Shown: positions 2,932-62,833 of the stretch, piece after piece
How the letters are laid out: the number at the start of each line of letters is the position of its first letter
Position numbering within the stretch: the stretch's first letter is position 1
Origin: Ostrea edulis
Taxonomy: Eukaryota
Direction of reading: 5' to 3'
Length of the DNA: 64,000 nucleotides
NCBI RefSeq assembly: GCF_947568905.1
Contig: NC_079166.1
Coordinates: 74,710,001-74,774,000 of the forward strand
Translations under genes and position numbers: made by a program
Notes under the pieces: generated by a model
Database searches by the model: none
What the model was told of the DNA's origin: nothing
Seen by the model: only the letters and a program-made list of their open reading frames with translations

Positions 2932-4922
2932 TCAAACTACTCGCATATCTACTGTCAATGGATCTTCTTCCGTGAACCCCTCAACTTTGCCTCCATTATC
3001 TTGGATATTGATGTCAGGATGCCGTGGTGTCTTTGATTCTGAAGGTACAAAGCACATATTACAGTTTGTATTATATCATAAAATATTGACTTGAACAGAA
3101 ACATGTCTAGAGGAAAACAGGAAATATGGATCAGGTAGACTTACCGTATTTTGTTGCGAACAGGGATGAACAAATACCTGAAATTGTTCAATAACACTAG
3201 CTACATCCATTATACCTTGACCAACATAAGCATTCTGCACTTATAATGAATTAAGATGAAGGTACATATAATTTATTATTACCTTTCAAGGAACAAAATC
3301 CCCGATGTTTGCAAACTCTGTATACAAGGAATATCAGACAAAGGATGAAAACTGCTATTGCTACGGGTATGATCACACAAAGAAGAACACTGTAAACATA
3401 AAATAACACAATAGACAATGCATAGCAATATCGAAGACGATGAATAAGATTTTTCCAAAAAATGATAAATATATCTGCGTTTTACATGCTCTTTTTCCTT
3501 AATACCTTAAACCAAGAATAATTACGTATTTTCGGGGGATGACTCCTGCTTTTGATTTTCTGCGTTCGTATGGTTAATTTTATGGGTGAGATGTGATTCT
3601 GACGTCGGCACTGCCTGGATATGGACAAGCAATGTTGACGATGTTGTAGATTTACCCCCATTCGCCGTATATATGCTGGACGACGTGGTGATATTAGGTT
3701 TAGCTGTCTGTCGACGTTGATAAGCTTGGCTATAACATTCTGAGTCTGTAAGTATTAAATGATCATAACTTGCTACAAACAAAATTGCATTTCTTTAAAA
3801 CACAGGCCACTGTAGTTCAGTGGCAGAGCGTTCGCATCGTAACTAGAAGGTCGTGAGATCGAGCCCCACTCATGCCATGGTCGAATCAAAACCATGGTTT
3901 AAGCATATGTAATGATTCTACCTTCGCCAAACGCTCAACATTTGGAATCACATATAGCATTAACTACGGAAGTCCCTTGTCGCGACAGGCATTGGCACAT
4001 TAAAGAACTCTGACACTTAAGCACTAAGCATAGGTGTAAATTTGTGACACTTCATCTACAAATGGTGACGTCTCAATATGATTGAAAAAAAGAGACGGGG
4101 TATAAAAACAAAGAAACAACAAAAAGAAATACATTGGACCAATCTTTTAAAATCATACTTAATCTTAAAATGTAAACGAAGCTTCTGTACGTACATTTGT
4201 AACTCTCATTTGATAGATAAACATCAGGACATGTAGCGCACTTTGCATTCCTATTCCGCTGTATTCTACGTCCACCTAAACTGTATTCTGCACACACTTT
4301 TCCTGATGGAAAATATCATTTCATATTTACTTTACCCCCAGCTATAATCTTCATGAAATTCCAAACATGACAAGATGAAATAATGACACACAATAGAAAT
4401 ATTTTCTTGGAAAGGTTTCCATACCTACAATATTCATGACTCTTGAACAGACTTCTATTGTTTCATTCTGCCATGCATTAGCCACACAGTGATACTCAAA
4501 TGCCCCGCAGCTGTTTATTATGTGACGACAACCTTTCTTTGATGCCGCAGTCGCCCACTCTGCAGCTGTTTTGGGACAACCTTGGACAACCTTTGCTGTT
4601 AAGTTGGACTCTATACATCCCTCTCCTATTGCAAACATCTTAAAATATTCCAACACTTTAATATCAATTATTGCTATAAGTTTCAGCAGCAGCAACAGCA
4701 TCATCATTCAATCACTATAATCATCATCATTCCATCACTAGCATCGTTGCTATTATATTCTATTCCAGTAGGTTAAAGTTTAGCAATTAATGTACATAAA
4801 ATGGCAATTGGATAATATGGTATTTCGTAGTTATAGCAAATTTTAAATTTTATGAATCTTACCTTAACATCTAAAAGGCATACACTGGCAACGATCATCA
4901 TTATGAGATATTGTAAAATCAT
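2932..4922 (-). CDS. Gene A1: 282-aa type I membrane protein (signal peptide, 10-Cys ectodomain, S/T stalk, TM, short cytoplasmic tail); unnamed family
   Basis: Coding exons 4922-4863, 4638-4425, 4302-4195, 3745-3526, 3389-3283, 3177-3145, 3038-2932 (849 nt). All introns are GT-AG with compatible phases 0,1,1,2,1,1 and there is no internal stop. Protein: MILQYLIMMIVASVCLLDVKMFAIGEGC...CPKTAAEWATAASKKGC...YHCVANAWQNETIEVC...CAEYSLGGRRIQRN...VLLCVIIPVAIAVFILCLIFLVYRVCK...DMRVV*. The same exon structure recurs in three other copies. Confidence 0.9.
3805..4085 (+). mobile_element. tRNA-derived SINE in intron 3 of A1, antisense to the gene
   Basis: Head ggccactgtagttcagtggcagagcgttcgcatcgtaactagaaggtcgtgagatcgagcc (A box, TCGTAA loop, B box) and 3' motif gtgacgtctcaatatga. 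It sits at the same intron position in A2 and A3, with a remnant in A4, so it predates the duplications. Confidence 0.7.
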
Positions 4923-5075
4923 ATTTGTTGAAGTCTGAACCTTCTAAACAAATTCTGCAAAGGAAAATTCATTATTACTATAGTTATATGTCATTTCTGT
5001 TTCTTCAAAATTAAGTTCCTTGAAGTATTATTAAAGGTATTGTTGTGAAAAGCGTGGCAGTCAATAGATACTTAC

Positions 5076-5185
5076 ACTTGAAGTGATATCGGGATGCCTC
5101 CAACAACAGAATTGAAAGTGTGTTGCTTGCAGGTGGTTTAGATTTGATATGAAGTCTGCATAGATAATACCACATTTATTAATGT
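5076..5185 (-). promoter_or_regulatory. Putative core promoter and non-coding first exon of A1
   Basis: A strong donor (gtaagtat, 5075-5068) is conserved in A2 (exon edge 38099) and A3 (56694). A TATA-like taataaat lies ~31 nt upstream of an Inr-like TCATATC near 5150. The TSS is inferred, not observed. Confidence 0.45.
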
Positions 5186-5238
5186 AAGCGATCCATATCT
5201 CATTCAAGATCGGAGACAACGATTTTTTTTCCGTTTTG

Positions 5239-5256
5239 TGAGTCATGGGAATCCCC
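5239..5256. promoter_or_regulatory. Adjacent AP-1 (TGAGTCA) and NF-kB/Rel (GGGAATCCCC) motifs upstream of A1
   Basis: TGAGTCA at 5239-5245, one base, then GGGAATCCCC at 5247-5256 (reverse GGGGATTCCC fits GGGRNNYYCC). Conserved in A2 and A3. Confidence 0.6.
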
Positions 5257-5514: not shown

Positions 5515-5515
<1 letters not shown>

Positions 5516-5590: not shown

Positions 5591-5594
<4 letters not shown>

Positions 5595-6596: not shown

Positions 6597-6600
<4 letters not shown>

Positions 6601-19303: not shown

Positions 19304-21296
19304 ATGACCACAGCTAGACTAGGCTATTATCTGTGTGTTTTACTGGTGATGACACACTTGTGATTGATTTCATAGAATATGGCATACCATATATCTAAAG
19401 GGATGACTAAAACATCTCCATTGGTTACATGTACGCCATTATATATTGTTTCTCACCGTATATCTCGTTTCTTTAGTTGTATTTTGTATATTTTTTTTCT
19501 TCAAGAACGATGATAATTGTTACTAACATTCTTTTGTAGTTTCGTCAATTTTAGACATTTTCAGAAAGTATCGCCAAATAACAGTCTACATATTGATAAC
19601 CTGTGTTGTGGGGGTAAGTTAAACACGTACATTAAAGTGAAATCATAATAATGAAGCGCATCAAATATACCGACCACTTATCAGATACAATCTTAAACAC
19701 TGTTTCCATTTACAGGTCAATGTATATGTGAATAACTCTACATGTGTGACTGATGTTGAAAGAGTCCCATATTGTCCGGCAACTGAAGAAAAATGGCGTA
19801 TGGCTGCTGAACGGAAAAACTGTTCCTCGAAGATTCCTGAGTGTCCTTACACGGATCCACTGAAATATCACTGCCTCATCAATGCCTGGCGAAACGAGAC
19901 TTATGAATTATGTGGTGTAGATACAGAAATCATAGGTAAACAACTTACATATATTCACATTTTAATCCTGGTAAAGAAAACCATATCTAGAGAATACAGA
20001 CTACAAGTGCATTGTGTATTTACCGTATGCCCTCGCGGATAAGACAAAATTCATACATTGCACGCTCCCATGTTATATCAGCTGTATCATATCTACAAGA
20101 ACATGTATTCCTTACATTTACGTTGTCTACTTTATGTGATGTTGTCCATGGAGACCATACTGTCAAATTGAACGATCACCTCGTCCACATAAAAAATATA
20201 ACTGAATTGTGATAGATTTATTCCTCGAAGATATAAGCTAAAGAGAAAAAGGTCAATATTTACGAATGCACATACCAAATGAATGATATAGTACCTTTGT
20301 CTAATTTACTAATCGATATTTTTTCTGGAAAACATTTTAAAAGTAAATTTACATACTTTAAACAAATCATTGTCGTAGCCTTTAACTGAAATTGTCCATG
20401 ACATTGAAAAATGTTGTTATAAACTATGATAACTTACTTTCTATGTTAAACTATGTCTTTCACTCGATTCAGAGATCTTTTCAAAAATAAGCAATTTGAT
20501 TCGAAATCATAATAACATTGTGTCTCCTTTATAGGGTTTTCTTGTGCAGAATACAATGCGGGTGGAAAGAAGATACAGCCAAACTACGCTAGTAGATGTG
20601 AATATTTTGATCCTGGCTGTCCTTTCAAGTATAATTCTTCAACAGGGTACTTTTGTTAGTATTCTTCATTTTTCAACCACTGTGCCTATAATTAACAAAT
20701 GCGTGCGTTTCTAAACTGAAAGGGGCTGTCTTAGAATATTTTAAAATACATTTCATTAAATGAGACTGTGCTAAATCACTATGATAATACAACAATTTTC
20801 TCTATCAAAGTAGTCATAAATGTTAACAAAATAATCAGTGTTCAGTACTGACAATAGTCGTCTTCTGTTCATTAAGTACATCGATTTGAGATTGAATTTT
20901 TAAAATTTTACAGAAAAAAGGCTAGTGAAAGAAATTATATCAGTTTATTGTTAACATCTGAAATACGTTTAGATTATATTAATATTTTGTATTCATCGTT
21001 TCGATCAACTCATCATTAAGTCATAATTATAAATTATAGCACAGACTTTTCATATATGTGCAACACATCATCACGTCTAGCGATCACTATATTTATCGTG
21101 TTTTCATATTTGCACCTTTTCTGTTTTATGCATAGATCCGAAGTGCTATCAGATATTACAAAATGACCACATAGTAGTCGAAGCTCTTAGTACCCGACAA
21201 CCCGATGATACAACTGTTGTAAATGTGACTTCTGCACAACCCGATGATACAACTGTTGTAAATGTGACTACTTCACCAAGTGAGGATGAAACGTAA
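19304..21296 (+). CDS. Gene P1: distant paralog of A1-A3 with signal peptide, 10-Cys domain and stalk; TM exon not found (180 aa if it ends at TAA 21294-21296)
   Basis: Exons 19304-19345 (weak gtgatg donor), 19716-19935, 20535-20654 and 21136-21292, with phases 0,1,1,2 as in the A genes. All ten Cys align (CPATEEKWRMAAERKNC, YHCLINAWRNETYELC, CAEYNAGGKKIQPN, YPKCY). The 3' end is uncertain. Confidence 0.75.
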
Positions 21297-21659
21297 GTCT
21301 TTTTTATTGAGGACAAGGAAATGTCACCATGTGTTACCTCAAAATATAATAAGAGGCTGAGTAGCTTTGTCGATATAATTTTCTTGGAGTATGGAATTCA
21401 AGGGCGCAGTGTTCCCAATCTTTACACGCCGCCTGAAAATAATATGAACATACCGGGTCGAAGTAAAGTGAATAAACCTTTGGATCCGCTCTAAACCTAT
21501 ATCTCCAGTATCATATCAATTACTTCTGCCATTGTTAAAAAGTCTTTTTCCTAATATGTTGTTTTTCCTGATTATTAACCATACAGCTCTGTATTTTACA
21601 TGTAGAATAATTTACAAAGTAAACCAGTTTGCAAAGTTTAATTCCACATGCATATAATA

Positions 21660-21800
21660 AAGAAGGGTCAAAATAACGAACAGTGATCAATCCCATAACT
21701 CCTATATGCAATACAAAATAAACACGGATCCCTAAGCATACCAGAGGTTGGATCAGGTGCCTATAAGGAGTAAACAGCCCCTGTCGACCGGTCACATCTA
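21660..21800 (-). mobile_element. Naiad pseudo-LTR fragment (duplicate at ~39560-39695)
   Basis: ataacgaacagtgatcaat...ggatcaggtgccta...gtcgaccggtcaca. Confidence 0.75.
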
Positions 21801-21896
21801 GCACAACTTGTTTCGCATAAACAACACTTTTTGATTTTAAATGTTTAACAAAATAATTTCACATATATAAGTAACAAATTTTTTTTACGTATTTAA

Positions 21897-23182
21897 AGAC
21901 CAAGTTTTTCGACCGGTCGGTTTACCTCAGGTAAGTTTAGTTGGGGGCGGAACTAATTTTAAGCAGGTGTGAAGCCCCGAGGGAAGAATGGTAGCTTGTG
22001 TATAGCTTTCTGAATACACGGGATGTTACCTGTGTTACCTGTACGTTTTCGTAAGATAAATCATAAGTGCAATTATTTTTCTTGTGCATGTTATTCAAAA
22101 TATTGATAAAAAAAATTAATGAATCAAACATGTTAAAGCACGATAAATTTATTTTGTAATTGAGGACGTTAGCCATTGAAAAATTAGGTTTGGATACCAT
22201 ACTCGGACTTTACGAATAACAGTAAGGTATGATGTCTCTCTTGTATCCGTACGTCTACCAAACATACAGATTCCTACGAGAATCCCTTCGTACTGCTGCG
22301 GATTTTCTGGTGATATAACGATCATCGTCCCACACCCCACGATGTCTCAACATAGGGCAGAATTTCTTATAAAGTTTTTTTCTGTTAGATTTACTTTTTC
22401 TGGACGGCACACCGGGATTTTCTGGCCACCAAAGTTGTCTGTGCGACTCGTCCATAACGCACGGCCTACACCAACAGTCGGAACGTTCAGCTCGTCCGGC
22501 ATTTCCCTCAATAGCTGGTCCAGGCGAAGAGGGTACTTCCTCATATATAACTTCTTCTTCCTCGGCATCCCAATCCCAACCATTGTATGCAAAAAGGGCC
22601 CTTACAGCGGATAATTTCTCTTCTGATAGAGTTGCGGTTACTTTTGTTGCCAGGTTTCGTCGTAAAATGACGCTGATAAAATTTCAATTGAATATAAACG
22701 GAATTTTAATGACGTATTTACTCATAATTAAAATTTTGATAATAATATATAAACACGACATTTCCAATGAAATTCGGTACAGTCTCTTGAGCATAAAATC
22801 CATGTCCATGTAAATTATGTTCTAACCATCCATAATTTTCTATCGCACCTCTTCCTAAACACAACCCATCGTAATTTATTATAATTGATGTAATTATATG
22901 TAAGATTTTCTACTCAATACATTATATTTTGTGACTATAGATGTAATACAAAGCCATAATTTTCTTATCAAAACTGTCTCTATTGAGCTGTCATACTACG
23001 CGGTAAACATCAAAAGATTTCACGGACGCATCGATCGAGAGACGAGGTGGACAATGTATACACACGGATTAGTAACTAAATGTCCATCAATTTCTAGCAT
23101 CCAATCTGAAGCTAAATTTCTCCTGATTGACAGGGGTTTACAGACCAGGTAAAATTGAAGGCGGTGCTTATTTCCTCGGTCT
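21897..23182. mobile_element. 1286-bp DNA transposon with TTAA target duplication and AG...CT termini (Kolobok-like)
   Basis: TTAA at 21893-21896 and 23183-23186. Termini are AGACCAAG and CTCGGTCT (7/8 inverted match). The duplicate block has the empty site with a single TTAA at 39791-39794. Confidence 0.75.
22149..22592 (-). pseudogene. Reading frame inside the TTAA element, interrupted by one in-frame TGA (22347-22349)
   Basis: Track ORFs 22347-22592 and 22149-22340 share a frame: MPRKKKLYMRKYPLRLDQLLREMPDELNVP...NSALC*DIVGCGTMIVISPENPQQYEGILVGICMFG. Product not recognised. Confidence 0.4.
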
Positions 23183-23259
23183 TTAACGGAATTAGTTCAA
23201 TCCGTTACATATATTTTATAGTTTTTGTGAATGTATCATGTTTTAAAGTATATTTGATC

Positions 23260-23421
23260 CAGAGCCCACGGCGGGTGTGACCGGTCGATAGGGGGTGCTT
23301 TCTCCTACGCACCTGATGCCATCTCTGGTGTGTCCAGGGGTCCGTGTTTGCCCAACTATCTATTTTGTATTGCTTGTAGGAGTTATGAGATTGATCACTG
23401 TTCGTTATCTTCACCTTTCAT
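23260..23421 (+). mobile_element. Naiad pseudo-LTR fragment (duplicate at ~39868-40031)
   Basis: cacggcgggtgtgaccggtcga...gttcgttatcttcacctttca. Confidence 0.8.
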
Positions 23422-24903
23422 CTTTCTCCCTTAATCTCTTGTGAAGGTCACCATTTGCCATCGCTGCACCTCTTCTTCTCGTATTTTTGCTGATTGTGAT
23501 GGGTATACCACTGTACATAAAGATAAAGAAAATACTCGAAAGACGGATGCCGAGAAACGGTACATTGTAATTACATACATAGGCAAACAATTCACGCGAT
23601 GTAGAGGTATGGATGCATTAGCTTCCGGAAGTAAAATATCGCACTTTGTACGTCAAGTGCACACAATAATTCAATCGCAATATTAAATATCAAATCATTA
23701 GAAAATACAATTGAGATAAAAGTAGATGTTCGTTTTAATATTTAATACTGAAAATTGAGTTTTTGACATAGTGAAAATGACAAGTTCAAAAATACTTTAA
23801 AAGTTTATTACGTGGACACTGGTGGCTTGTGAATTCTGGATAAGTTTTTAACTATTATACTGGTATAAGAAGTGGAATTCTTCATTTTCGCAGTATTTAG
23901 TAATATATTTATTATGATACCTGCGATATTTTCTACATTGTTTTGTTGAAGTCGTAAATGTTCACAAAAGCTGTCATTGATAAACATTGCGTACTAATTT
24001 GATATTTTTGGCTTTCGTCATAAACTCTGGTTTTAGGTTTCAATCATCCATTCACCGTGTCGGTCGGAAAGTTTTTTTTCAAAGACAGAAAATCCATACC
24101 ATGTTCTTTCCACACCTGCATTAAATGTTCCGTTAAACAACGAATAACAGTTACCCAGTAAACCAAAGTGATATCTTGTCGATCCCTCATCAATAGTCTC
24201 GTGTATTCTAGTTTACTGTAACGTATCTTGCTTTCTAAGTTTAAAATGTGTCGTCATAGACGTTACTGCCCTAAGGAATACTTCTAGCCTACTTTTCAAA
24301 GGTAGAATAAGTAAATAAACAATATTATTTAACCCGATATGTTGGAGCAGGATAAATAAAATGCACCATAGCTGTCTGGATTTTTTTTTCACATGATAGA
24401 AAGAATTGGAAGCATATTATACGAAACCTTTATATGTCTGCAATCACGATACCTATTAAATAATAAATATCTATTTTTGCAGATGAAAGGGAAACTACAG
24501 AAGATACCCCAATGGTCGAAACGGTGTGATAACAAATATTAATATCTCATGTAATATAGTCGAAGCCGATTGGTCGAGAACATTTGAAAAAACATTGTTA
24601 CCCTCTGAGAACAGAAAGCACACGCTCGAGCGTGATGGTATTTAGCAACGGGTAACATCACTCCATAACAGGTAATATTATTTAAATATTGAATGTACTT
24701 GATGGCATTGAACATTTTCATTCCGAGAAAACCATTGTCAATCGAGGCGTAGCCGAGGTTGAAAACGGTTTCTCGAGGAGTGAACAGGTGCAATGCTACC
24801 CTCAACTGCATGCAATGTTTGTTTTATTATACTGAATGTTATACAAACAGCAAAGCATAAAAACTTACGTTTGTTGACATTTGCTAAATCACTGTAATGT
24901 GAT

Positions 24904-35950: not shown

Positions 35951-37944
35951 TCAGACTATATCTACTGTCAAAGGATGTTCTTCCGTAATCCTCTCGTCTT
36001 CAAGTTTGGCTCCATCATCTTCGATATTGATGTCTGTCTGCCGTGGTGTCTGAGATTCTGAAGGTACACAGCACAAGTCACAGTTTGTATTATATCATAA
36101 AATATGGACTTGAACAGAAACATGTCTCGGTAAAGGAAACCAGGAAATATTGATCAGGTAGACTTACCGTATTTTGTCTTGAACAGCGATGAAAAAATAC
36201 CTGAAATTGTTCAATAGCACTAGCTATATTCCTTATACCTTGACCAACACAAACATTCTACACTGATGATAAATTAAGATGAAGGGATATATAATTTATT
36301 ACTACCTTTCAAGGAACAAAATTCTCTATCTTTGCAAACTCTGTATACAAGGACTATCAGACAAAGGATGAAAACTGCTATTCCTACGGGTATGCTCACA
36401 CAAAGAAGAACCCTGTCAACATAAAATGGCACAATACATAGCAAAGTCAAAGACGATGAATAAGATCTGTCCAAATAATGATAAATATGCCATGTAGGTG
36501 TTGCATGTTCATTTTCTTTAATACCTTAAACAAAAAATAATTACGCATTTTGGGGGTATGACTCTTGCTTTTGATTTTCTGCGTTCGTATGGTTAGGGGC
36601 GAGCTTTGCTTCTGACGTCACTTCCTTCTGGATATGGATAAGCAATCTTGACGATATTGTAGATTTACCATCATTCGTCGTATATATGCTGGGCGACGTG
36701 ACGATATTAGGTTTAACTGTTTTTCGACGTTGATAAGCTTGGCTATAACATTCTGAATCTGTAAGTATTAAAGGGTCATAACTTATTACAAAAAAAGCAA
36801 AATTTGCATTTGTTCAAAACACACGCCACTGTAGTTCAGCGGTAGAGCGATCGCATCGTCACTAGGAGGTCGTGAGATCGAGACCCATTCATGCCATGGT
36901 CGAATCAAAACCACGATTTAAGCACATGTAGTGATTCTGCCTTCGCCAAACGTTCAACATTCGGAAGTGAGAATCATGGGTCTATCACATATAGCATTAT
37001 CTACGGAAGTCCCTTGCTGCGACATGCACTGGCACATTAAAGAACCCCTACTCTTAAGCACTAAGCATATGTGTAAATTTGTGTTACTTCATCTACAACT
37101 GGTGACGTCTCGATATGAGTGAAAAAAAGATGTAGAGTGTAAAAACAAAGAAACAACAAAAAGAAATACATTGGACCAATCTTTTAAAATCATACTTAAT
37201 CTTAGAATGTAAACGAGGTTTTTGTACGTACATTTGTAACTCTCATTTGATAGATAAACATCAGGACATGTAGCGCACTTTGCATTCCTATTCCGCTGGA
37301 TTCTACGTCCACCTAAACTGTATTCTGCACACGCTTTTCCTGATGGAAAATATCGTTTCAGATTTAGTTTATCTCCAGTTATAATCTTCATGAAATTCCA
37401 AACATGACAAGATGAAATAATGACAAACAATGGAAATATTTTCTTAGAAAATGTTTCATACCTACAATATTCATGACTCTCGAACATACTTCTATTGTTT
37501 CATTCTGCCATGCATTAATCACACAATGGTACTCGAATGATCCACAGTTGTTTTTGATGTGATTACAGGCTTTCTTTGATGCCGCAGTCGCCCACTCTGC
37601 AGCTGTTTTGGGACAACTTAGGACAAACTTTGCTGTTAAGTTGGACTCTATACATTCTTCTCCTACTGCAAATATCTTAAAATATTCCAACACTTTAATA
37701 TCAATTATTACTACAAGTTTCAGCAGCAGTATCATCATTGAATCACTATCATCATCATTCCATCACTATCATCGTTGCTATTATAATTCATTAATTAAAG
37801 TTTATCAATTAATGTACATAAAATGAAAATTAGATAACATGGTATTTCGTAGTTATAGCAAATCTGAAATCTTATGAATCTTACCTTAACATCTAGAAGG
37901 CATATACTGGCAACGATCATCATTATGAGATATTGCAAAATCAT
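35951..37944 (-). CDS. Gene A2: 280-aa type I membrane protein, 10-Cys ectodomain family
   Basis: Coding exons 37944-37885, 37675-37462, 37339-37232, 36758-36545, 36412-36306, 36200-36168, 36057-35951 (843 nt). GT-AG introns, compatible phases, no internal stop. TM is VLLCVSIPVGIAVFILCLIVLVY. Confidence 0.9.
36825..37125 (+). mobile_element. Intron-3 SINE of A2
   Basis: Positional and sequence match to 3805-4085. Confidence 0.7.
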
Positions 37945-38263: not shown

Positions 38264-38281
38264 TGAATCATGGGAATCCCC
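38264..38281. promoter_or_regulatory. AP-1-like (TGAATCA) plus NF-kB (GGGAATCCCC) motif pair upstream of A2
   Basis: Paralogous to 5239-5256; the central base of the AP-1 site differs. Confidence 0.55.
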
Positions 38282-38587: not shown

Positions 38588-39303
38588 ATCCAATAATAAA
38601 AGTCAAGAAACACAAAACTCGAATAACATTTCACTGTTAGCTCTTTCGGCTTTAATGTCTCTTCAGACAGTAATACATTTAAATAATACTGCTAAGTAAC
38701 GTCAACATATCGCGACGTAAGAAATTGTTCTTTGTGACGTTATAATAATTTACACTGGTAGCGGTATAATACACACAATATTAGACAATACTGGGATATC
38801 AATTGCAGAGTTCAGTTCAATGTAGTTTCAATTTTACACTGTTATTTTCTATTAAGTTTGAGATTAAACAATTTTATAAAGTATTCCTCCTTTTTAACTC
38901 TGGAAATTTCGCAGTCATTATACATTTTATAAAATGGAAATATGTTGAAATCTCCATGACCACAATTGGCAAAATGTTCGAAACATGGCGCATTTCTGAT
39001 ACTTGGACCGTGAATTTGCTGCTTGTGGACGCGCACACGGGCGTTCACTTTGTTGGTTTGTCTGATGTAGTTTTCATTCCAGGTAGGGCAGGTCATACAA
39101 TATATTACGTTTTCGGATTTGCATGTCTTGGTAGAATTTGGTGTTAATTTTTTTGCCGCATTTAAGAATTTTTTTCTCTGTCTTCCACTAGATGATTACA
39201 TGTACCGCAAAGTGAATCCCCACATTTTTGCACGGATTTGGAATTTTCCGTAGTAAATCGGGAGCGTGTTAGAAGTGAATTCAGATTAGGAGCCTGTCTT
39301 CTG
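38588..39303 (-). mobile_element. Penelope GIY-YIG fragment shared with A1, cut off by the duplication junction
   Basis: Matches 5591-6298. ORF 38842-39096 reads MTCPTWNENYIRQTNK...EEYFIKLFNLKLNRK. Confidence 0.85.
38632..38672 (-). ncRNA. Hammerhead motif, duplicate of 5635-5675
   Basis: ACTGT-CTGAAGA-GAC attaaa GCC-GAAA-GAGCT-A^ACAGTG. Comparison with A1 implies an ancestral perfect GGC/GCC stem II. Confidence 0.7.
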
Positions 39304-41527
39304 CAGTGTTCCCAATATTTCCACGCCGCCTGAAAATAATATGAACATACTGGGTCGAAACAAAGTGAATAAACCTTTGGATCCGCTCTAATCCTATATT
39401 TTCAGTATCATATCAATTACTTCTGCTTTTGTTAAAAAGCATTTTTCCTAATATGTTGTTTTTCCTGATTATTAACCATACAGCTCTGTATTTTGTATGT
39501 AGAATAATTTACAAAGTGAAACATTTTGCAAAGTTAAATTCCACATGCATATAATAAAGAAGGGTCAAAATAACGAACAGTGATCAATCCTATAACTTAT
39601 ATATGCAATACAAAATAAACACGGATCCCTAAGCACACCAGAGGTGGGATCAGGTGCCTATCAGGACTAAACAGCCCCTTTCGACCGGTCACATCTAACA
39701 CAACTTGTTTCGCATAAACAACACTTTTTGGTTTTAAATGTTTAACAAAAGAATCCACATATATAAGTAACAAAATTTTCTTTTACGTATTTAACGAAAT
39801 TAGTTCAATCCGTTACATATATTGTATAGTTTTCGTGAGTGTATCATGTTTTAAAGTATATTTGATCCAGAGCTCACGGCGGGTGTGACCGGTCGACAGG
39901 AGATGCTTTCTCCTCCTAGGCACCTGATGCCATCTCTGGTGTATCCAGGGGTCCGTGTTTGCCCAACTATCTATTTTGTATTGCTTGTAGGAGTTATGAG
40001 ATTGATCACTGTTCGTTATCTTCACCTTTCATCTTTCTCCCTTAATCTTTTGTGAAGGTCACCATTTGCCATCGCTGCACCTCTTGTTCTCGTATTTTTG
40101 CTGATTGTGATAGGTGTACTACTGTACATAAAGATAAAGAAAATACTCGAAAAACGGATGCCGATAAACGGTACATTGTAATTACATACATAGGCAAACA
40201 ATTGACGCGATGTATAGGTATGGATGCATTAGCTTCCGGAAGTAAAATATCGCACGTTGTACGCCAAGTGCACACAATAATTCAATCGCAATATTAAATA
40301 TCAATTCATTAGAAAATACAATTGAGATAAAAGTAGATGTTAGTTTTCAAATTGTGTTTTAGTATTTGATACTGAAAGTTGAGTTTTTGACATAGTGAAA
40401 ATGACAATTTAAGAAAAACTTTAAAAGTTTATAACGTGGACACTGGTGGCTTGCCAATCCTGGATAAGTTTTTAACTATTATACTGGTATAAGAAGTGAA
40501 ATTATTCATTTTCGCAGTCTTTAGTAATATATTTATTATGGTACCTGCGACATTTTCTACAGTGCTTTGCTGAAGTCGTAAATGTTCACAAAAGCTGTCA
40601 TTGATAAACAATGCTTACTAATTTGATATTTTTGGTTTTCGTCATAAACTCTGGTATTTGGTTTCAATCATCCATTCACCGTGTCGATCGGAAAGCTTTT
40701 TTCAAACACAGAAAATCTATACCGTGTTCTTTTCACACCTGCATTAAATGTTTCCGTTAAACAACGAATAACAGTTACCCAGTAAACCAAAGTGATATCT
40801 TGTCGATCCCTCATCAATAGTCTCGTGTATTCTAGTTTACTGTAACGTCGGTTGCTTTCTAAGTTTAAAATGTGTCGTCATAGACGCTACTGCCCTAAGG
40901 AGTACTTCTAGCCTACTTTTCAGAGGTAGAATAAGTGAATAAATAATATCATTTAACCCGATATGTTGGAGCAGGATAAATAAAATGCACCATAACTGTC
41001 TGGATTTTTTTCCCACTTGATATAAAGAATTGGTAGCATGTTATACGAAACCTTTATATGTCTGCAATCACAATACCTATTAAATAATACATATCTATTT
41101 TTGCAGATGAAAGGGAAACTACAGAAGATACCCCAATGGTTGAAACGGTGTGATAACAAATATTAATATCTCATGTAATTTAGTCGAAGCCGATTGGTCG
41201 AGAACATTTGAAAAAACATTGTTAACCTCTGAGAACAGAAAACACACGCACCAGCGTGATGGTATTTAGCAACGGGTAACATCACTCCATAACAGGTAAT
41301 ATTATTTAAATATTGAATGTACTTGATGGCATTAAAAATTTTCACTCCGAGAAAACCATTATCAATCGAGGCGTAGCCGAGGTTGACAATGGTTTCTCGA
41401 GGAGTGAACAGTTGCAATGCTACCATCAACTGCATCCAATGTTTGTTTTATTATACTGAATGTTATACAAACAGCAAAGCATAAAAACTTACGTTTGTTG
41501 ACATTTGCTAAATCACTGTAATGTGAC

Positions 41528-41911
41528 CAGTGGCGGATTCAAGGGGATGCATCCCCCGCCTTAAAAATGTTTAATTTAAGGTAAATCGTGGTATCTTCTT
41601 TTGAGAAATGTAAATCATTTAAGAAGCAATAATTTCTTCCACTCTCAGAGCAATAAATGACAAAATCGTTTGATATATGAGAATACTTTTAATGAAAGAA
41701 CTTGCATTTTTAAAACTTTTTTATTATCAAAAATGACAGAAAATATAAAAACTGCCTACATAGGTGACATGGGAGACATATTTGAATTCCTATAAAATCT
41801 CTAAAAATCCACGAGCTTCCATTGGGGACATCAAGGCGGCTCACAGACCCCCTGCGACATAAAGTTGCCTCATAAAGTCCCCCCCTACCACAATTCCTGG
41901 ATCCGCCCCTG
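41528..41911. mobile_element. MITE, duplicate of 24904-25291
   Basis: cagtggcggattc...ggatccgcccctg. Confidence 0.65.
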
Positions 41912-44900
41912 GTATATCAATCCGAGTATGCGCTTAAACGACATCGTTTAACATTCTACGGAGAACCGTACGCGTTTAAAATGGAAGTATTTTTATGATA
42001 TCACCCGTTGTCAAGTATTATTACTCGTTACTAGATACTATCATTTTGGAACGCGACTTTTCTGTTCTCAGAGGGTAACAATATGCTTTTAAATGCTTCT
42101 CAACCATCAGATTCAAGTATCTGTTGATTAGTTGAGGATAACACTCAAAATTGCCACCCCTCGAGAAACCGTTGTCACCCTCGGCAACTCCTCGGTTGAC
42201 AATGGTTTTCTCGCCCCAATGTAACCCTCAAGTACATGCAATATTCATATACTAGCACATGTACATGTACAAATTGTTTTCTATTAAAATTGGTTTGAAA
42301 TTGTCAATTTGACTGACTAATGCACTTGTGTTTGCGGATATTAAACGAGCGTTAACATGACGGAAGGTTTGCCCATTGTGACGTCATAATAGACTGGAGT
42401 AAAAGCATAACGTCAAATGTATACATTTCGTACATACATGTAACGTATTTCATATTAAAAATAAGACGTAAACATTTAGCAAGGGCACACATTCCATTAA
42501 AATGGGAATAGCTTTCTTTTCATTTTTAGCGACTGGTAATGCTGATTTGATGGTCACAAACATCCGATTCACCGGAAAAATCGGCATTAAGGCTCGCAAA
42601 TAATAAACGGGGTGTTAATTTTTCCTTAAATGCATATTTTTTCATTATGTTGTCTATTTTTACTAGTATATCTGATGTTCTTTTTAAACATGGAGGCTAT
42701 CCTGCAATATCCACAAGAATGCATGTCTTATTTTCCAAATTAATAATATGGAACAATTGCGCAAATTCAACTGCCGTGTATATGAACATCAATATGCCAA
42801 TTGCACATTTCTGATTTTTTTTTTAAATACTCGACACTTTTAGTAATTCCACTCTCATTTGACGTCATAAGAGTTTACAAATTTATTGATTTATTTCGAT
42901 TGATACATGGTATGAACTTAAATTTTGTTGGAGTATTTCCTGATACGAATTGTAAAACAATCTTATTTAACATACAATATTTTATAAGTCTAATGTATGT
43001 ATGGTAGATAAGTTTATATGTTTATTTGATAGTGGATCCAAAGGCAATAACTCTGTTTTTATTTATTTCATTATCGACTTCATTGTACACCAATTTCCTT
43101 TATTTTTCAAATATTTGGAAATCATTGAAAATCATTGAAAAAGTTTGTAAAATAACAGTTTCATGAAATTTTCATGAATTTTATCATATCCTTATAACCA
43201 GATTTTGTGTAATTTCAATATTGTTGTTAAGGAAAATTGTAGTCTTTTTATGAACGATTATTTTTGTACATGCCTCGCATCTTACAAATTGCAATAAACT
43301 ACACTGTATATATCTTATTTGATAGTTTATTAGTTTTAGAGATGATGAATGAAAATAAATGCACGATCTATACTTTTAACGGATAATAATACGACTATGG
43401 AGTTAAATTAATAGCCCCTTCACTGTGTCATTAATACTTCATGCATATTTCAAATAAGTTTTTTTTTATTGTTCAAATGTCGTCATTATATAGTCGCTCT
43501 TTATAAAATTCCAATATTGTATTATTTTTCATTGCATCCTTAGCAGATATGGTCAACACAATGGTGTTGTACATATCTTGGTTTCATGAATGAATGTAGG
43601 ATGACAATTGAATTACTGCACCCAGGAATGCATAACCCTAGTAAAAATGTTTAACATGGGCCGCTTTATTTCCCCCTTTATCGGGTCACTAAACCTAAAG
43701 AATACCATTCATGATTTAACTGTATAGCACGGGGTATTTAAATAGGTCATAGTAAAGACGCATCGTAAGATTATTAAAAAGCTACGAAGCCTGTGAAATG
43801 TCGCACACTGTTTATTGAAAGCGAGAACTAACCCGAGACCATCAGATTATCCAACTCATTTCATTCGACACAGTTCAGGCAATGGAGAAAAGATGAATGG
43901 AGAACGGTAGTGTGATTTTAGTGACTGCATGCGTATTGTAATAGGGCATCAAATTTTTGGTGACTGCATGAGTTTAATGTTTGATCAATCACAATAATAA
44001 ATGCGGAAAACATGAAAATCAATGCCAAAAAAGTAGATACTTCTAGAACTATGCAAAACACATTTAACAACGGCAATGTTTTATACAGACACACACTAGA
44101 CGAGACTAAATACCAAAGGATAATAGTGTTAGTAAGTGGTTTTATTATAAGCTATTCTGATTTAAAGAATGGTTCATTGCCTGGCTTTTAATTATAAGGA
44201 TCTATATCCAAGGCCTGTTGAATGGGAGAAGATGTCCCACTGTCAAAAGAGTGAAGATGTAACTGAAACAAAAAAACATTCCCAATAAAATAATTTTCAT
44301 CAGCATCATTATTCATCAAAACCTTTGTAGAATGTTTCATTCAACTAACATTTGATCTCATCAATATTGAAGCACAATAATTGAACAATAAAGCTCGCAA
44401 CAGTACATGGGTTGAAAAGTTGCATTTTGTTTGTAGTCACTTGTAAAGTAGACATTTGTAAGAATGGGTCACATTGCAAACATTAAGCATTTTCCTTATA
44501 GCGCATGTATTCATATTTCAATCGCTGTCTTATAAAAGTTGAAGATAACGAATGATTACAAATATTATGATTTTTAAGAGAAATGCAAAACAAATATAAG
44601 ACAAATATATACTCCTGGACTCATCACAGTCGGGATAATGTGGCTAGGAGGAGTAAGCATTGCCGGTCAAAGTCAAAATTAATATGCAAAGAGCGGCCAA
44701 ACACTTGTATAAAACACGTCAGAGAGCATTTAATTTACTGACAAGTTATATTTTCAAATTAGATCGTTATGATGACCAAAGGATTTGGAAATGCTGAATT
44801 TAAACGAAATTCTTCAAACGCATATACATGTAACATCAACATATTTGTTAGCAGTCTTAATTTAAAAACTGATCACACGTAGAACATGCTCCTGCTTATC

Positions 44901-54555: not shown

Positions 54556-56539
54556 TCAGACTATATCAACTGTCAATGGATGTTCTTCCGTAAACCTCTC
54601 GTCTTGAAGTTTTCCTCCATTATCTTCGACATTGATGTCTATATGCCGTGGTGTCTGATATTCTGACATACAAAGCACAAGTCAAATTTTTGAATTACGT
54701 CATAAAATATGGGTTTGAACAAAAACGTATCTCAAAGAAAGTAAAAACAAGAATTAAGGATCAGGTAGACTTACCGTATTTTGTCTTGAACAGGGATGAA
54801 AAAATACCTGCAATTGTGAAAGAGTACTAGCTATATTCATTATACCTTGACCAACACAAACATTCTACACTTTTAATGAATTTAGATGAAGGTATATATA
54901 ATTTATAGCTATACCTTTCAAGGAACATTCCTTATCTTTGCAAGCTTTGTATACAACTAATACCAGGAAAAGGATGAAAACTGCTAGTGCTACGGGTATG
55001 CTCACACCAAGAAAAACCCTGTAAATTTAAAACGGCACAATGCAACAGTAATATCAAAGACATGAATAAGATATGTTCAAAAGTTGATAGATACGTCATG
55101 TGCGTGTTACATGTTCTTTTTCGTTAAATCCTTAAGCAAAAAATAGTTACGCATTTTCGTGGAATGACTCCAGCTTTTGATTTCCTGCGTCCGTATCGTT
55201 AATGTTAGAGGCGAGCTGTAACTCTGACGTCGGCACTGCCTGGATATGGGCAAGCAATGTTGACGATGTTGTAGTTATACCTTTAGTTGTCGTATATACG
55301 CTAGACGACGTGTTGATAAAAATAGGTCTTACTGTCTCTCGGCGTGGATATACTTGGCTGTAACATTCTGAATCTGTAAGCATACAATGGTCATCACTTG
55401 CCACCAAAAAACAATTTTGAAAAACAAAGATTTTAAATGGCAAAATATAATTCAAGGATTTTTAAGCCTTGCATTCGCATTTGTTTAAAACACAGGTCAC
55501 TGTAGGTCTGTGGAACAGCTTTCGTATCGTAACTGGGAGGTCGTGAGCTCCAGCCCCGGTCATACCATGGTCGCATCAAAACCACGATTTAAGCATAGAT
55601 AGTGATTCTCCCTTCGCCAAACGCTCGAAATTTAGAAGTGACAATCATGGATCTATCAGATATAAAATTGACTACAGAAGCTCCTTCTCGGGACAGGCAT
55701 TGGCACGTTAAAGAACCCTTACTCTTAAGCAATAAGCATAGGTGTAAATTTGTGACACTTCATCTGCAACTAGTGACGTTTCAATATGAATGAAACAAGA
55801 GACGGTTAAAATGTAAACGTTATTTTGTACGTACATTTGAAACTCTCATTTGATTTATAAACAGCTGGACATGCTTTGCACTTTGCATTCTTATTCCGCT
55901 GGATTCTACGGCCACCAAAACTGTATTCTGCGCATACGTTTCCTGTTGGAAAATATCGTTTCAGATTTACTTTACCCCAAGTTATGATTTTCATGAAATT
56001 CCAAACATGACAAAATGAAATAATAACAAACAATGAAAATATTTTCTTGGAAAAGTCTTCATACCTACAATATTTATGACTCTAGAACAGACTTCTATTG
56101 TTTCATTCTGCCATGCATTAGTCACACAGTGGTACTCAAATGACCCGCAGTTGTTTATTATGTGACTACAACCTTTCTTTGATGCTGCAGTCGCCCACCC
56201 TGCAGCTGTTTTTGGACAACCTTGGACAACCTTTACTGTTAAGTTGGACTCTATACATTCCTCTCCTACTGCAAATATCTTAAAATATTCCAACACTTTA
56301 ATATCAATTATTACTACAAGTTTCATCATCATCATCATCATTAAATCACTATCATCATCACCGTTGCTATTATGTTTCATTCCTGTAGGTTAAAGTTTAT
56401 CAATTAATGCACATAAAATGGCAAATAGATAATATGGTATTTCGTAGTTATAGCAAACTATAGCTCTGATTAATCTTACCTTAACATCTAAAAGGTACAC
56501 ACTGGCAACGATCATCAGTGTGAGATACTGCAAAATCAT
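54556..56539 (-). CDS. Gene A3: 282-aa type I membrane protein, 10-Cys ectodomain family
   Basis: Coding exons 56539-56480, 56278-56065, 55942-55835, 55373-55151, 55018-54915, 54807-54775, 54662-54556 (849 nt). GT-AG introns, compatible phases, no stop seen. TM is VFLGVSIPVALAVFILFLVLVVY. Confidence 0.9.
55495..55800 (+). mobile_element. Intron-3 SINE of A3
   Basis: Positional and sequence match to 3805-4085. Confidence 0.7.
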
Positions 56540-56856: not shown

Positions 56857-56874
56857 TGAGTCATGGGAATCCCC
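56857..56874. promoter_or_regulatory. AP-1 (TGAGTCA) plus NF-kB (GGGAATCCCC) motif pair upstream of A3
   Basis: Identical 18-mer to 5239-5256, although neighbouring sequence has diverged. Confidence 0.6.
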
Positions 56875-60025: not shown

Positions 60026-60919
60026 TAAGTGTCATTGTTCAGTATTGTGATAAGATTTGTATAACCTCCATGCGATGTGTCCTGCACATTCTTGAGTGTA
60101 TAAGTAAGCATTGGCTTATTACCAAGAAAGACAGACATAAGTGTAGAGGTATTTTGAATTGGGTCAGTATTATGTGAGTCATAATTATCTTGGATTTGTC
60201 GGTGAATTTTCTGGCACTTAATTGGTTTAAATGAAAACAGCACATAAAATGCGACTTTAACGACAAAGCTACCGTATACATGGGGGCAAAATCGATTGAT
60301 GTTCGTAGCCCGATTCCAACGATGGCCCGGATCCGGTTTTATTTCAATAATATTGTTCGAAATAATCATATTTTATTAACTTTGAATAATTACTGGTTTC
60401 GTAAAAAGACAATGGAACAATCCCCAATTATAATATTTAAATATTGCGATTTGTATTAAACCTATAGTTTGGAAAAGTATTCGGATTTCGTGCATGGAAT
60501 GTGAAATTCCGGTTATTTGCAGACCATAAAAAGAAAAATTCACTTATCCCCCAGGCCTCGATACAAAACACTCTTAACTTCTATGCAGTATGCAATATAC
60601 TAAACAATTCATTAATATTTATTGGATCGAGGCCTGGGGGTTATACAAATTTTTGGTGTATATTGTTGGATATTATCAACTTTTACAAAAATAACACAAT
60701 TGCTATGGGTTCTGCATGCTATAATTTCTATATGCGTGAATTTTCGCGGAAAAAACCCACTAGATTTATAAAGAAGAGGGTCTAAGCTATTTCATACCAT
60801 GATGGAATTTTGGAAGGAAGATACTTTATTTTACTCAAAATTACAGGGTCATATTTGAGTATCTGTGGCTCTTGTTCTTTCTTAACCTGCCATTAGTATA
60901 CCATCACTCATTAAAAACT

Positions 60920-61260
60920 CCATCTAACATCACTCTGTCAATCTCTGCTTAACGACGCTCGGTCAATCTCTAACATCACTTAGTCAATCTCTGACATCAC
61001 TCCGTCAATCTCTAACATCACTCAGTCAATCTCTGACATCACTCAATCAATCTCTATCTAACATCACTCAGTTGATCTCTAACATCAGTCACTAAACCTA
61101 TCTAGTATCAGTCAATCTCTAACATTACTCAGTCAATCTCTATCTAACATCACTCAGACAATCTCTAACCTCAGTCGCTTAACCTATCTAATGTCAGTTT
61201 TTCAATCTCTATTTGACATCAATCAGCCAATATCTATTTGATATCAGTCAGTCAATAAAA
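60920..61260. repeat. 3' UTR minisatellite of A4
   Basis: acatcactcagtcaatctct units. Confidence 0.8.
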
Positions 61261-61590
61261 CACTGATATTTGTCAATCAGGCCTATCTGAAATTGGTTAA
61301 TCTGAGCCTATCATTGCCAAGTTCCATTTGGCGTGCTTAAGGTATAATGATGTCATCAGTCAGTCAATTTCAATATGTCGATTTCCAGTCAAACGTGCTC
61401 AAATTTGTTTTTATAATATGGTGCATGATCTTTCAATTTGTCCTTCATTGTCACTTTTAACTTGTCATTTATCAATCTCAATTCGCCATTAGTCAGTCAA
61501 TCGTAACCTGTCACCAACTAGTCAATCTTAAGTTGTCAGTAATCAGTTAATTTTGATATGCCATTATTAAGTCGATATACGCATCCTTTA

Positions 61591-62833
61591 CTATATCACT
61601 TGGACTATATCTACTGTCAATGGATGTTCTTCCGTGAACCTCTCGTCTTCAAGTTTGTCTCCATTATCTTGGACATTGATGTCTGTCTGCCGTGGTGTGT
61701 GAGAGTCTGAAGGTACAAAGCACAAGTTACAGTTTGTATAATATCGTGAAATATGGACTTGAACAGAAACATGTCTCGGTAAAGGAAAACAGGAAATAGG
61801 GATCAAGTCGACTTACCGCATTTTGTCTCCAACAGGGATGAAAAAATACCTGAAATTGTTAAATAGTACTAGCTATATCCATCATATCCTGACCAACACA
61901 AGCATTCTCTACTGATAACAAATTCAAATGAAGGTATATATACTGTATTACTACCGTTCAAGGAATGATATTTTCTATCTTTGCAAAATCCGTATACAAT
62001 TAATATCAGACAAGGGATGGAAACTGATATTGCTCCGGCAATGCTTGCACCAAGAAGAACCCTGTAAACAAAAAGTGGCACATTGCATAATACTATTTCA
62101 AGCGATGAATAAGATCTGTCCAAAGATGGTCAGTACGTTATGTACTGGCCATATGGTCTGTTTTCTTTTATTTCGTTAAACAGAAGAAAAACATTACGCT
62201 TTTTCGGGAGATGACTCCAGCTTTTGGTTTTCTGTGTTTGTATAGTTAATGTTAGGGACGAGTTGTGACATCAGTCCTGTCTGGTTATTAAAAGCTGGTG
62301 ATGTTGCAGTTATACCCTCATTTGCTGTGTGTTCACTCGAGGACACATTAAAAAGAATGGGTGTAACGGTCTTCCGACTCTGATAGTCTTGGTGAAAACA
62401 TTCGGAATCTGTGAGTATAAAATGATCAGAATATGTTACATAAAACTATCTTGAAAAATGATTATAAAGCCAATTTTTACTGGATTAAAGGTTCCTTCAC
62501 CCCACTCTCGGCAATTATAAATGCAAATCACAGGATTTTCGGATATGATTTTAAAAACGGAGGATCTGTGTCTAGAAAGTCGTTGACAAGTTAAAGAACC
62601 CTCTCTGCTAAATATTAATCATAGATATAGATTAGCGGTATTTCACCTACAGCTGGTGACGTTTCAATATGAGTGCAAAATTCTCCACTGGACGCAAAAC
62701 AAACAACCAATGAATCACCGAAAGGAAATACATTGCAATAATCTTTTCAAATAGTCAGCATTTCAATGTTAATATGTAAATGTGTTTTATACGTACATTT
62801 ATAGCTCTCATTTGATTTATAAACAGTTGGACA
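61591..62833 (-). pseudogene. Gene A4: 5'-truncated family member (last third of exon 3 plus exons 4-7 intact)
   Basis: Exon remnants 62833-62797, 62408-62198, 62061-61955, 61849-61817 and 61706-61591 are open and phase-compatible. Homology stops mid-exon 3; promoter, signal peptide and most of the Cys domain are absent. Confidence 0.8.

What the first reader, a model, noticed from the sequence alone, without database searches (positions are those of the whole stretch)
2932..62833. Actively duplicating cluster of an unnamed 10-cysteine cell-surface receptor family
Seen: three intact spliced genes, one inverted distant paralog, one truncated copy and the flank of another. All share a Cys scaffold (C..CP.T..EW..AA..K.C..C..YHC..NAW.NET.E.C..G..CAEY..GG..IQ.N..C..CP..Y.S..Y..CY), an S/T stalk with N-glycosylation sequons, one TM helix and juxtamembrane cysteines. 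I recognise no named domain in it. Inference: tandem expansion, membrane and possibly secreted forms, and kB/AP-1 promoter motifs together look like a lineage-specific innate recognition receptor family. The supplied ORF track does not show it.
Basis: partly seen in the sequence, partly recalled or inferred. Interest (0 to 1): 0.75.

Follow-up and report, generated by a model that had tools for sequence, protein, structure and literature searches.

The report
Oyster-only cysteine-rich surface protein gene cluster
This stretch of the European flat oyster genome holds a tandem cluster of real, spliced genes for small cell-surface proteins whose ten-cysteine outer domain matches no named family or solved structure, and whose promoters carry a conserved NF-kB/AP-1-type switch, so an inducible defence or stress role is plausible but untested.

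Summary
The window is Ostrea edulis chromosome DNA. It carries three intact 7-exon genes on the minus strand: A 2932-4922, B 35951-37944, C 54556-56539. They equal RefSeq 'uncharacterized' proteins LOC125674688, LOC130052843 and LOC125677557. There is also a 5'-truncated copy (61600-62833), a divergent plus-strand paralogue (19716-23559) and, new here, a 3' fragment of that paralogue (39303-44540).

The family is large: at least 123 exon matches in this genome and 1186 protein clusters. All 18 clusters that carried names came from true oysters.

The composite GGGGATTCCCATGACTCA occurs only 10 times in the 895-Mb genome. Each occurrence lies upstream of one of the ten subfamily genes, and the kB 10-mer recurs upstream of the closest Saccostrea homologue.

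An immune recognition role remains inference. No RNA data were reachable and the tail has no signalling domain. Earlier notes of this scan describe apparently similar oyster-only families elsewhere in this genome.

The parts
2932..4922 (-). Gene copy A (= LOC125674688, P0180, 282 aa). Coding parts of the exons: E1 4863-4922 (signal peptide), E2 4425-4638 and E3 4195-4302 (Cys domain), E4 3526-3745 (tenth Cys plus S/T stalk), E5 3283-3389 (TM), E6 3145-3177, E7 2932-3038 (tail and stop).
   Evidence: all junctions AG/GT; tblastn of P0180 gives 96-100% identity exon by exon
5239..5256 (-). Composite kB (GGGGATTCCC) plus AP-1 (TGACTCA) site of copy A, 334 nt upstream of the ATG. A TATA-like TAATAAA lies at 5175-5181, and an inferred 5'UTR intron at 4955-5075.
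19716..23559 (+). Divergent inverted paralogue: E2 19716-19935, E3 20535-20654, E4 21136-21292, E5 (TM) 23447-23559. It has the same intron phases as the subfamily. The signal-peptide exon and the tail exons were not found.
35951..37944 (-). Gene copy B (= LOC130052843, P0179, 280 aa): E1 37885-37944, E2 37462-37675, E3 37232-37339, E4 36545-36758, E5 36306-36412, E6 36168-36200, E7 35951-36057.
38264..38281 (-). kB/AP-1 composite of copy B (one mismatch, in the AP-1 half).
39303..44540 (+). Duplicate (92.6-93% identity) of the 3' part of the plus-strand paralogue, starting in its intron 4. It includes an open copy of the TM exon at 40058-40170.
54556..56539 (-). Gene copy C (= LOC125677557, P0016, 282 aa): E1 56480-56539, E2 56065-56278, E3 55835-55942, E4 55151-55373, E5 54915-55018, E6 54775-54807, E7 54556-54662.
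56857..56874 (-). kB/AP-1 composite of copy C (exact match).
61600..62833 (-). 5'-truncated copy D: the last 41 nt of E3 (62793-62833), E4 62198-62408, E5 61955-62061, E6 61817-61849, E7 61600-61706 with the stop displaced by three codons. It has no signal-peptide exon, no exon 2 and no promoter block.
63224..63988 (-). Distal 3' flank of the next subfamily gene (LOC125677565, L004), whose exons lie beyond the window end.

Best explanation
SHOWN. The window is part of a ten-gene tandem array on Ostrea edulis chromosome contig C3 (74.565-74.779 Mb). The array belongs to a large family that, among named proteins, is found only in oysters. Each gene has seven exons and encodes a type I membrane glycoprotein. 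Its parts are a 20-aa signal peptide on its own exon, a compact ~115-aa ectodomain, a poorly constrained S/T-rich N-glycosylated stalk, one TM helix followed by two conserved juxtamembrane cysteines, and a 59-aa tail. The ectodomain has ten conserved cysteines and one invariant N-x-T sequon, and is predicted with high confidence as a helix-plus-beta-sheet fold. The tail has conserved blocks (CSLKGIFSSLFKTKYE and FTEEHPLTVD) but no recognisable signalling domain. The ectodomain is a family of its own, with no Pfam or NCBIfam model, no PDB sequence relative and no structural match. The subfamily shares a proximal promoter block, TGGAGTCGGyCGGG(G/T)ATTCCCATGACTCA. This joins the SELEX optimum of mammalian NF-kB p50 homodimers to a perfect AP-1 TRE, about 60 nt upstream of a conserved TATA-like box.

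INFERRED. These genes are switched on by Rel/NF-kB and AP-1, that is by infection, injury or stress. They place a disulfide-stabilised binding module on a mucin-like stalk at the cell surface. With no signalling domain of its own, the protein most likely acts as a ligand-binding or adhesion subunit. It would work through a partner protein, through palmitoylation-dependent membrane partitioning, or as a shed or decoy binder. The ligand and the biological role (microbe recognition versus another surface function) are unknown.
Against: There is no expression, induction or binding evidence. The only reachable runs were DNA contigs without splice joints. Binding of oyster Rel or AP-1 to the site is untested, and six of the ten genes carry GGGTATTCCC, which departs from the classical GGGRNNYYCC at position 4. 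The tail has no ITAM/ITIM-type motif, TIR, Death or kinase domain. The Cys domain shows overall purifying selection rather than the diversifying selection typical of many recognition receptors. Other family members lack the kB/AP-1 block, so an inducible promoter is a subfamily trait, not a family trait. No paper mentioning any of twelve family gene IDs was found.
Confidence: 0.55

Rival explanations
1. Same proteins, non-immune role. They would be lineage-specific surface adhesion or barrier glycoproteins (epithelial or mucosal coat, cell-cell adhesion, larval settlement, gamete or shell-related). The kB/AP-1 block would then reflect general stress or wound responsiveness, or developmental use of Rel and AP-1.
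For: Mucin-like stalk and short tail without a signalling domain. Overall purifying selection on the Cys domain. Most family members lack the kB/AP-1 block. Tails across the family are very heterogeneous, including coiled-coil, LIM and weakly HSP70-like tails, as expected for a general-purpose ectodomain.
Against: The exact kB optimum fused to a perfect AP-1 site is conserved across ten paralogues and in a second genus. This is the classical signature of inducible inflammatory or stress genes. Large tandem lineage-specific expansion is common for invertebrate immune receptors. Neither point is decisive.
Confidence: 0.3
2. The ectodomain is a highly diverged member of a known disulfide-rich alpha/beta module (SRCR, C-type lectin-like, PAN/apple, Link) that the searches missed.
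For: Size (~115 aa), a helix packed on a beta-sheet and multiple disulfides are generic features shared with those modules. The tools state that a missing match does not prove a new fold.
Confidence: 0.07
3. The array is a decaying or non-functional product of segmental duplication, made of annotation-only genes.
For: Truncated copy D, a 3' fragment of the plus-strand paralogue, one member with an in-frame stop (L010), and many transposon insertions between the copies.
Against: Nine of ten genes keep all seven exons open with canonical splice sites. pN/pS is 0.39 in the Cys domain at dS 0.14-0.28. The promoter block is conserved. A spliced transcript exists for a Crassostrea member.
Confidence: 0.04

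Closest known systems
SRCR-domain scavenger receptors (for example the expanded SRCR repertoires of sea urchin and amphioxus)
   Same: The ectodomain module is ~110 aa, disulfide-rich, and has a helix packed on a beta-sheet. It sits on single-pass or secreted proteins, in large lineage-specific tandem expansions, with a presumed recognition role.
   Different: There is no sequence or structural match to SRCR. This domain has ten cysteines in a different spacing, occurs once per protein, and sits on a mucin-like stalk.
C-type lectin-like and other bivalve-expanded recognition families (CTLs, C1q, FREPs)
   Same: Massive bivalve- or oyster-specific expansion in tandem arrays, with a surface or secreted location.
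   Different: No CTLD, C1q or fibrinogen signature or fold was found. No carbohydrate-binding motif is recognisable.
Classical NF-kB/AP-1 co-regulated inducible genes (vertebrate cytokine- and adhesion-gene type promoters)
   Same: A kB decamer identical to the p50 SELEX optimum (PMC10527052) abuts a perfect TRE about 60 nt upstream of a TATA-like box.
   Different: Binding by oyster Rel and AP-1, and inducibility, are untested. Six paralogues carry GGGTATTCCC. The two sites are separated by a single A (GGGGATTCCC-A-TGACTCA) rather than spaced apart.
Oyster-only Cys-rich single-pass receptor-like arrays noted earlier by this scan (s1-268681, s1-268727, s1-292095)
   Same: Same genome, 7-exon genes, signal peptide, Cys-rich head, one TM helix, and no known fold. 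They may belong to the same superfamily, whose exon-2 matches lie mostly on contigs C3 and C7.
   Different: Those notes describe eight fixed cysteines and tyrosine-motif tails. The subfamily here has ten cysteines, no YxxL-rich tail and a kB/AP-1 promoter block. I did not verify that they are the same family.

Membership tests
Any Pfam-A / NCBIfam family (including SRCR, Lectin_C, PAN, Fz, Ly6/uPAR, TNFR CRD) | Significant profile-HMM match of the ectodomain | tested here: not met
   No family at E<=10 for exons 2 and 3. No ectodomain hit at E<=0.01 in ten full-length members. NCBIfam gives only TM-helix noise.
Type I single-pass membrane glycoprotein | N-terminal signal peptide, one TM helix, N-glycosylation sequons in the ectodomain, and a basic stop-transfer on the cytoplasmic side | tested here: met
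   Exon 1 encodes a hydrophobic 20-aa leader. A single hydropathy peak is followed by R/K-x-C-K. The N-E-T sequon is invariant, and the stalk carries sequons. No dedicated signal-peptide predictor was available.
NF-kB target gene | kB site matching GGGRNNYYCC in the proximal promoter | tested here: met
   GGGGATTCCC at -334 from the ATG in copies A, B, C and L004. Six paralogues have GGGTATTCCC, one position off the consensus.
NF-kB target gene | Binding by Rel-homology proteins and induction on pathway activation | not testable with these tools
   No RNA runs were reachable. There are no binding data.
Innate immune pattern-recognition receptor | Demonstrated ligand (microbial or danger) binding, or a recognised signalling domain or motif (TIR, Death, ITAM/ITIM, kinase) | tested here: not met
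   The tail of 59 aa has no Pfam domain, and the three window genes have no Yxx[LIV] motif. Ligand binding is not testable here.
STAND/NLR-linked sensor module | The same domain fused to a STAND NTPase in one polypeptide | tested here: inconclusive
   ESM Atlas clusters of 739-806 aa carrying nSTAND3 (with or without Ank) match the model at TM 0.71-0.73 over 101 residues. I could not fetch those sequences. None of the 21 scored nSTAND3 loci in this genome lies next to an exon-2 match.

The most novel reading that the evidence does not exclude
The ten-cysteine module is a genuinely new protein fold that oysters invented as a general extracellular sensor head. They would have wired it to many different intracellular outputs: short palmitoylated tails, coiled coils, HSP70-like ATPases, LIM domains and, in some molluscan proteins, STAND NTPase-ankyrin modules. 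The subfamily in this window would be its Rel/AP-1-induced arm, that is surface recognition molecules raised on demand during infection.
Probability: 0.2. Interest if true: 0.8.

Novelty: new variant of a known kind. Interest (0 to 1): 0.55.

Why it matters
Bivalves survive in microbe-rich water without adaptive immunity, and much of their expanded gene repertoire is unnamed. This finding defines an orphan domain family of more than a thousand protein clusters and more than a hundred copies in one genome. It comes with a confident predicted fold that matches nothing solved, an exact exon plan, and a family alignment ready to become a domain model. One ten-gene subfamily offers a sharply testable regulatory hypothesis: a genome-unique kB/AP-1 composite that is also present in a second oyster genus. 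If the induction and a ligand are confirmed, this would add a new class of inducible surface recognition molecules to invertebrate immunity. It could also give markers for disease-resistance work in the flat oyster. If not, it still names a large piece of oyster 'dark' proteome.

Tried and rejected
1. Word-index protein search with exon 2 alone found nothing, because of its length window. The full HMMER scan with an exon-2 profile solved this.
2. The RNA evidence search failed. The only holders were DNA contig sets; laying four of them gave intron and intergenic coverage and no joints.
3. Family gene IDs in the literature: two searches with twelve LOC identifiers gave 0 papers. Three broader keyword searches gave nothing relevant.
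4. The nSTAND3 link could not be verified by sequence. Only 21 of 228 candidates in the genome were scored, and none is adjacent to a family exon. The feature search of the ESM Atlas gave no usable hit. The region-restricted search with a long member found only its Saccostrea paralogue.
5. An HSP70-like reading of the long Saccostrea tails rests on weak hits only: Pfam E 0.047, PDB profile E 0.022, NCBIfam HscA E 0.026. I keep it as a lead.
6. A viral origin or mimic was rejected, with no BFVD match.
7. My first hand splice of exons 3 and 4 (…YKC|T…) was wrong. RefSeq and the conservation of the acceptor across paralogues show …YK|YSECY.
8. Rfam at gathering score found nothing in the window.
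Full-length sequences used were those returned by the protein tools. Selection statistics were computed exon by exon and summed.
Full report
WHERE AND WHAT. The window is G000:C3:74710001-74774000. The proteins it encodes are RefSeq models of Ostrea edulis on a 98.27-Mb chromosome. It is AT-rich (30-39% GC) and has no N runs.

Self-comparison shows segmental duplication:
- 2436-6298 against 35467-39304, at 88% identity.
- 4165-5429 against 55806-57056, at 87%.
- 2367-3596 against 61038-62268, at 76%.
- 23179-27925 against 39787-44540, at 92.6%.

GENE MODELS. I derived the exons of copy A by reading the sequence and mapped them onto the other copies. The full-length sequences I used are database proteins returned by the tools.

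tblastn shows that P0180 (LOC125674688, 282 aa) is copy A, P0179 (LOC130052843, 280 aa) is copy B, and P0016 (LOC125677557, 282 aa) is copy C, each encoded exon by exon at 95-100% identity. All three have seven coding exons with AG/GT at every junction:
- E1: a 20-aa signal peptide.
- E2 (214 nt) and E3 (108 nt): the Cys domain.
- E4: the tenth cysteine (…YK|YSECY…) and the stalk.
- E5: the TM helix plus R/K-x-C-K-D-x-x-x-C-S-L-K.
- E6: IFSSLFKTKY.
- E7: an acidic tail.

My first hand splice of E3/E4 was wrong. The acceptor conserved among paralogues and the RefSeq proteins corrected it.

Copy D (61600-62833) keeps 41 nt of E3 and open E4-E7, with the stop shifted by three codons. It lacks E1, E2 and the promoter.

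E2 19716-19935, E3 20535-20654, E4 21136-21292 (stalk with NVT sequons) and E5 23447-23559 (TM helix and basic stop-transfer) all have AG/GT and the same intron phases. I could not find its signal-peptide exon. Its 3' part, from intron 4 onward, is duplicated at 39303-44540, including an open TM-exon copy at 40058-40170.

Positions 63224-63988 resemble the 3' flanks of copies B and C. They belong to the next gene, LOC125677565 (P0178, locus L004), just beyond the window.

THE ARRAY AND THE FAMILY. Exon 2 of copy A finds 123 matches in the 895-Mb genome at E<=0.01, a lower bound, mostly on contigs C3 and C7. The ten best form one array on C3, at 74.565-74.779 Mb.

All ten have the 7-exon plan. 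One (L010) has an in-frame stop in E4. Locus-wide identities are 91% for A-B and about 80% among the other window copies. They are 67-76% between the two halves of the array, and 99% for L008-L009 outside the window.

'Actively duplicating' therefore fits the array but not the window's own copies. Their synonymous divergence in the Cys domain is 0.14-0.28.

A profile of 17 exon-2 peptides (A1) finds 1186 clusters at E<=0.001 and 740 at E<=1e-10 among 1.84 billion representatives. Of the 20 clusters I looked up, 18 carried names. All 18 are 'uncharacterized protein' or a spurious name, from Ostrea edulis, Crassostrea/Magallana gigas, angulata or virginica, or Saccostrea echinata or cucullata. 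The other two are unnamed Logan assemblies. The word search gave the same taxa. I could not list the weaker hits, so restriction to true oysters is supported only for the best hits.

Most full-length members share the same plan: signal peptide, domain, stalk of about 40-65 aa, and TM helix. The tails, however, range from 8 to 511 aa.

IS THE DOMAIN KNOWN? The tests were all negative:
- Pfam gives nothing for exons 2 and 3, even at E<=10, and nothing in the ectodomain of ten full-length members.
- NCBIfam gives only TM-segment noise.
- A 77-sequence alignment (A3) has invariant C21, P22, C37, C44, Y49, H50, C51, T60, C64, C75, C93, C96 and S102, and near-invariant C8, W28, N58, E62 and C111. 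It finds nothing in PDB sequences better than E 0.61.
- AlphaFold2 on A3 gives a confident model (pLDDT 91.2, pTM 0.84) with a short helix, a longer helix at 25-35, a multi-stranded sheet at 48-101 and two short C-terminal helices.
- Foldseek against PDB has best E 2.6.
- BFVD has best E 2.5.

In the ESM Atlas the fold recurs at TM 0.91-0.93 in mollusc 'hypothetical' clusters. It recurs at TM 0.71-0.73 over 101 residues in mollusc clusters of 739-806 aa that carry nSTAND3, with or without ankyrin repeats. That last point is a lead only, because I could not retrieve those sequences. None of the 21 scored nSTAND3 loci of this genome neighbours a family exon.

SELECTION. Nei-Gojobori counts were computed exon by exon and pooled over the 45 pairs of the ten genes. 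They give pN/pS of 0.39 for the Cys domain, 0.82 for the stalk and 0.65 for TM plus tail. The head is constrained and the stalk is nearly free. There is no global signal of diversifying selection in the head. Site-specific tests were not attempted with so few sequences.

PROMOTER. At 5239-5256 (minus strand) lies GGGGATTCCCATGACTCA. This is a kB decamer followed, after a single A, by the AP-1 heptamer TGACTCA.
- In the window it occurs three times, upstream of A, B and C, against 0.03 expected.
- In the whole genome it occurs ten times at <=1 mismatch, all on the gene strand upstream of the ten array genes. The reversed control pattern gives none.
- In an alignment of the 700 nt upstream of the ten ATGs, the motif window is the most conserved of 938 windows.
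- It sits 308-337 nt from the ATG in nine genes. An insertion moves it to 1155 nt in L006.
- Downstream of it, a TATA-like box (TAATAAA or TATAAA, about 60 nt away), a TTCATAT block, and a GTAAGT…CAG pair are conserved. The last pair implies a short 5'UTR intron. This places the composite roughly 90 nt upstream of the likely start site, which is inference without RNA support.

The closest homologue outside Ostrea is Saccostrea echinata P0010 (45% identity). It has the identical decamer, inverted, 262-271 nt upstream of its ATG, and TGAGTCA 326-332 nt upstream. That decamer is the only copy in 23.4 kb, against 0.03 expected.

More distant members lack the pair. P0185 has only a weak variant, and P0152 and P0187 have none within 1.5 kb.

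GGGGATTCCC is reported as the SELEX consensus of NF-kB p50 homodimers (PMC10527052). GGGRNNYYCC and TGA(C/G)TCA are the textbook kB and TRE consensuses, from my own knowledge. Six of the ten genes carry GGGTATTCCC, one position off the classical consensus.

EXPRESSION. No RNA run holding the locus was reachable. The four runs laid are DNA contig sets covering introns and flanks, with no joints. Indirect evidence comes from a 984-nt Logan contig (L031) carrying the uninterrupted 279-aa CDS of a Crassostrea member. It aligns to that member's gene (L035) in seven blocks, so it is a spliced transcript with the same exon plan.

INTERPRETATION. Four things are shown: the genes, the architecture, the orphan status of the domain, and the constrained promoter block. 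Two things are inferred: Rel/AP-1-driven induction, and a ligand-binding or adhesion function at the cell surface.

The tail gives no signalling handle. It has no Pfam domain, and the three window genes have no Yxx[LIV] motif. A partner protein, palmitoylation at the two conserved juxtamembrane cysteines, or shedding would therefore be needed for signalling.

The domain's use with very different tails elsewhere fits a modular sensor or binding head, but does not prove it. Those tails include a coiled coil (P0026), LIM domains (P0117), and a weakly HSP70-like tail in Saccostrea (Pfam E 0.047, PDB profile E 0.022).

The main rival is a non-immune surface role with a generic stress promoter. A disguised known domain and a dead array are both unlikely.

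RELATION TO EARLIER NOTES. This scan has already described oyster-only Cys-rich single-pass families with no known fold on other pieces of this genome (s1-268681, s1-268727, s1-292095). It has also noted the AP-1/NF-kB element of this window (s1-307094). Those families may belong to the same superfamily. I did not verify that.

VERDICT. The immune-receptor reading is plausible and now sharply testable, but unproven.

Noticed in passing
window 39303-44540 (+), TM-exon copy at 40058-40170: A 92.6-93% identical duplicate of the 3' part of the plus-strand paralogue, from its intron 4 onward. It has an open copy of the TM exon but no Cys-domain exons.
   Followed up: partly
L008 and L009 (G000:C3:74.578 and 74.663 Mb); L010: Two array genes outside the window are 99% identical over 3.2 kb. 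This could be a very recent duplication, gene conversion or an assembly duplicate. L010 carries an in-frame stop in exon 4.
   Followed up: partly
P0131, P0064, P0139, P0060, P0188 (Saccostrea cucullata, 588-691 aa): These family members carry the ten-Cys head and a TM helix, followed by a ~400-aa cytoplasmic region. That region weakly and consistently resembles the HSP70/DnaK nucleotide-binding domain (Pfam E 0.047, PDB profile E 0.022, NCBIfam HscA E 0.026). They may be membrane-anchored HSPA12-like ATPases.
   Followed up: partly
ESM Atlas clusters (rows 4-5): Mollusc proteins of 739-806 aa with nSTAND3, with or without ankyrin repeats, contain a region matching the ectodomain model at TM 0.71-0.73 over 101 residues. 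The sequences could not be fetched.
   Followed up: partly
window 9129-9520 and 34890-35236: Another first-stage note calls 9129-9520 a hammerhead retrozyme. The element has an 84% identical copy at 34890-35236, but an Rfam scan of the whole window at gathering score returned no family at all.
   Followed up: partly
window 4055-4151 (intron 3 of copy A): Summed contig depth in four DNA runs rises to 124-9140 in this bin, far above the neighbouring bins. This indicates a very high-copy repeat. The adjacent sequence near 3800-3900 looks like a tRNA-derived SINE.
   Followed up: no
window 48067-49707 (-), with inverted repeats 47321-47709 / 47842-48230: A 546-aa ORF with a weak reverse-transcriptase match (RVT_1, E 3.8e-4). 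It lies in a repeat that also occurs at 6830-7802 (97% identity), 28474-29125 and 45361-46000. This is retroelement debris between the gene copies.
   Followed up: partly
L032 9670-9741 (Saccostrea echinata): The promoter of the closest non-Ostrea homologue keeps both a TGAGTCA and the exact kB decamer, but they are 55 nt apart and the kB site is inverted. The arrangement is therefore flexible while the sites are kept.
   Followed up: yes
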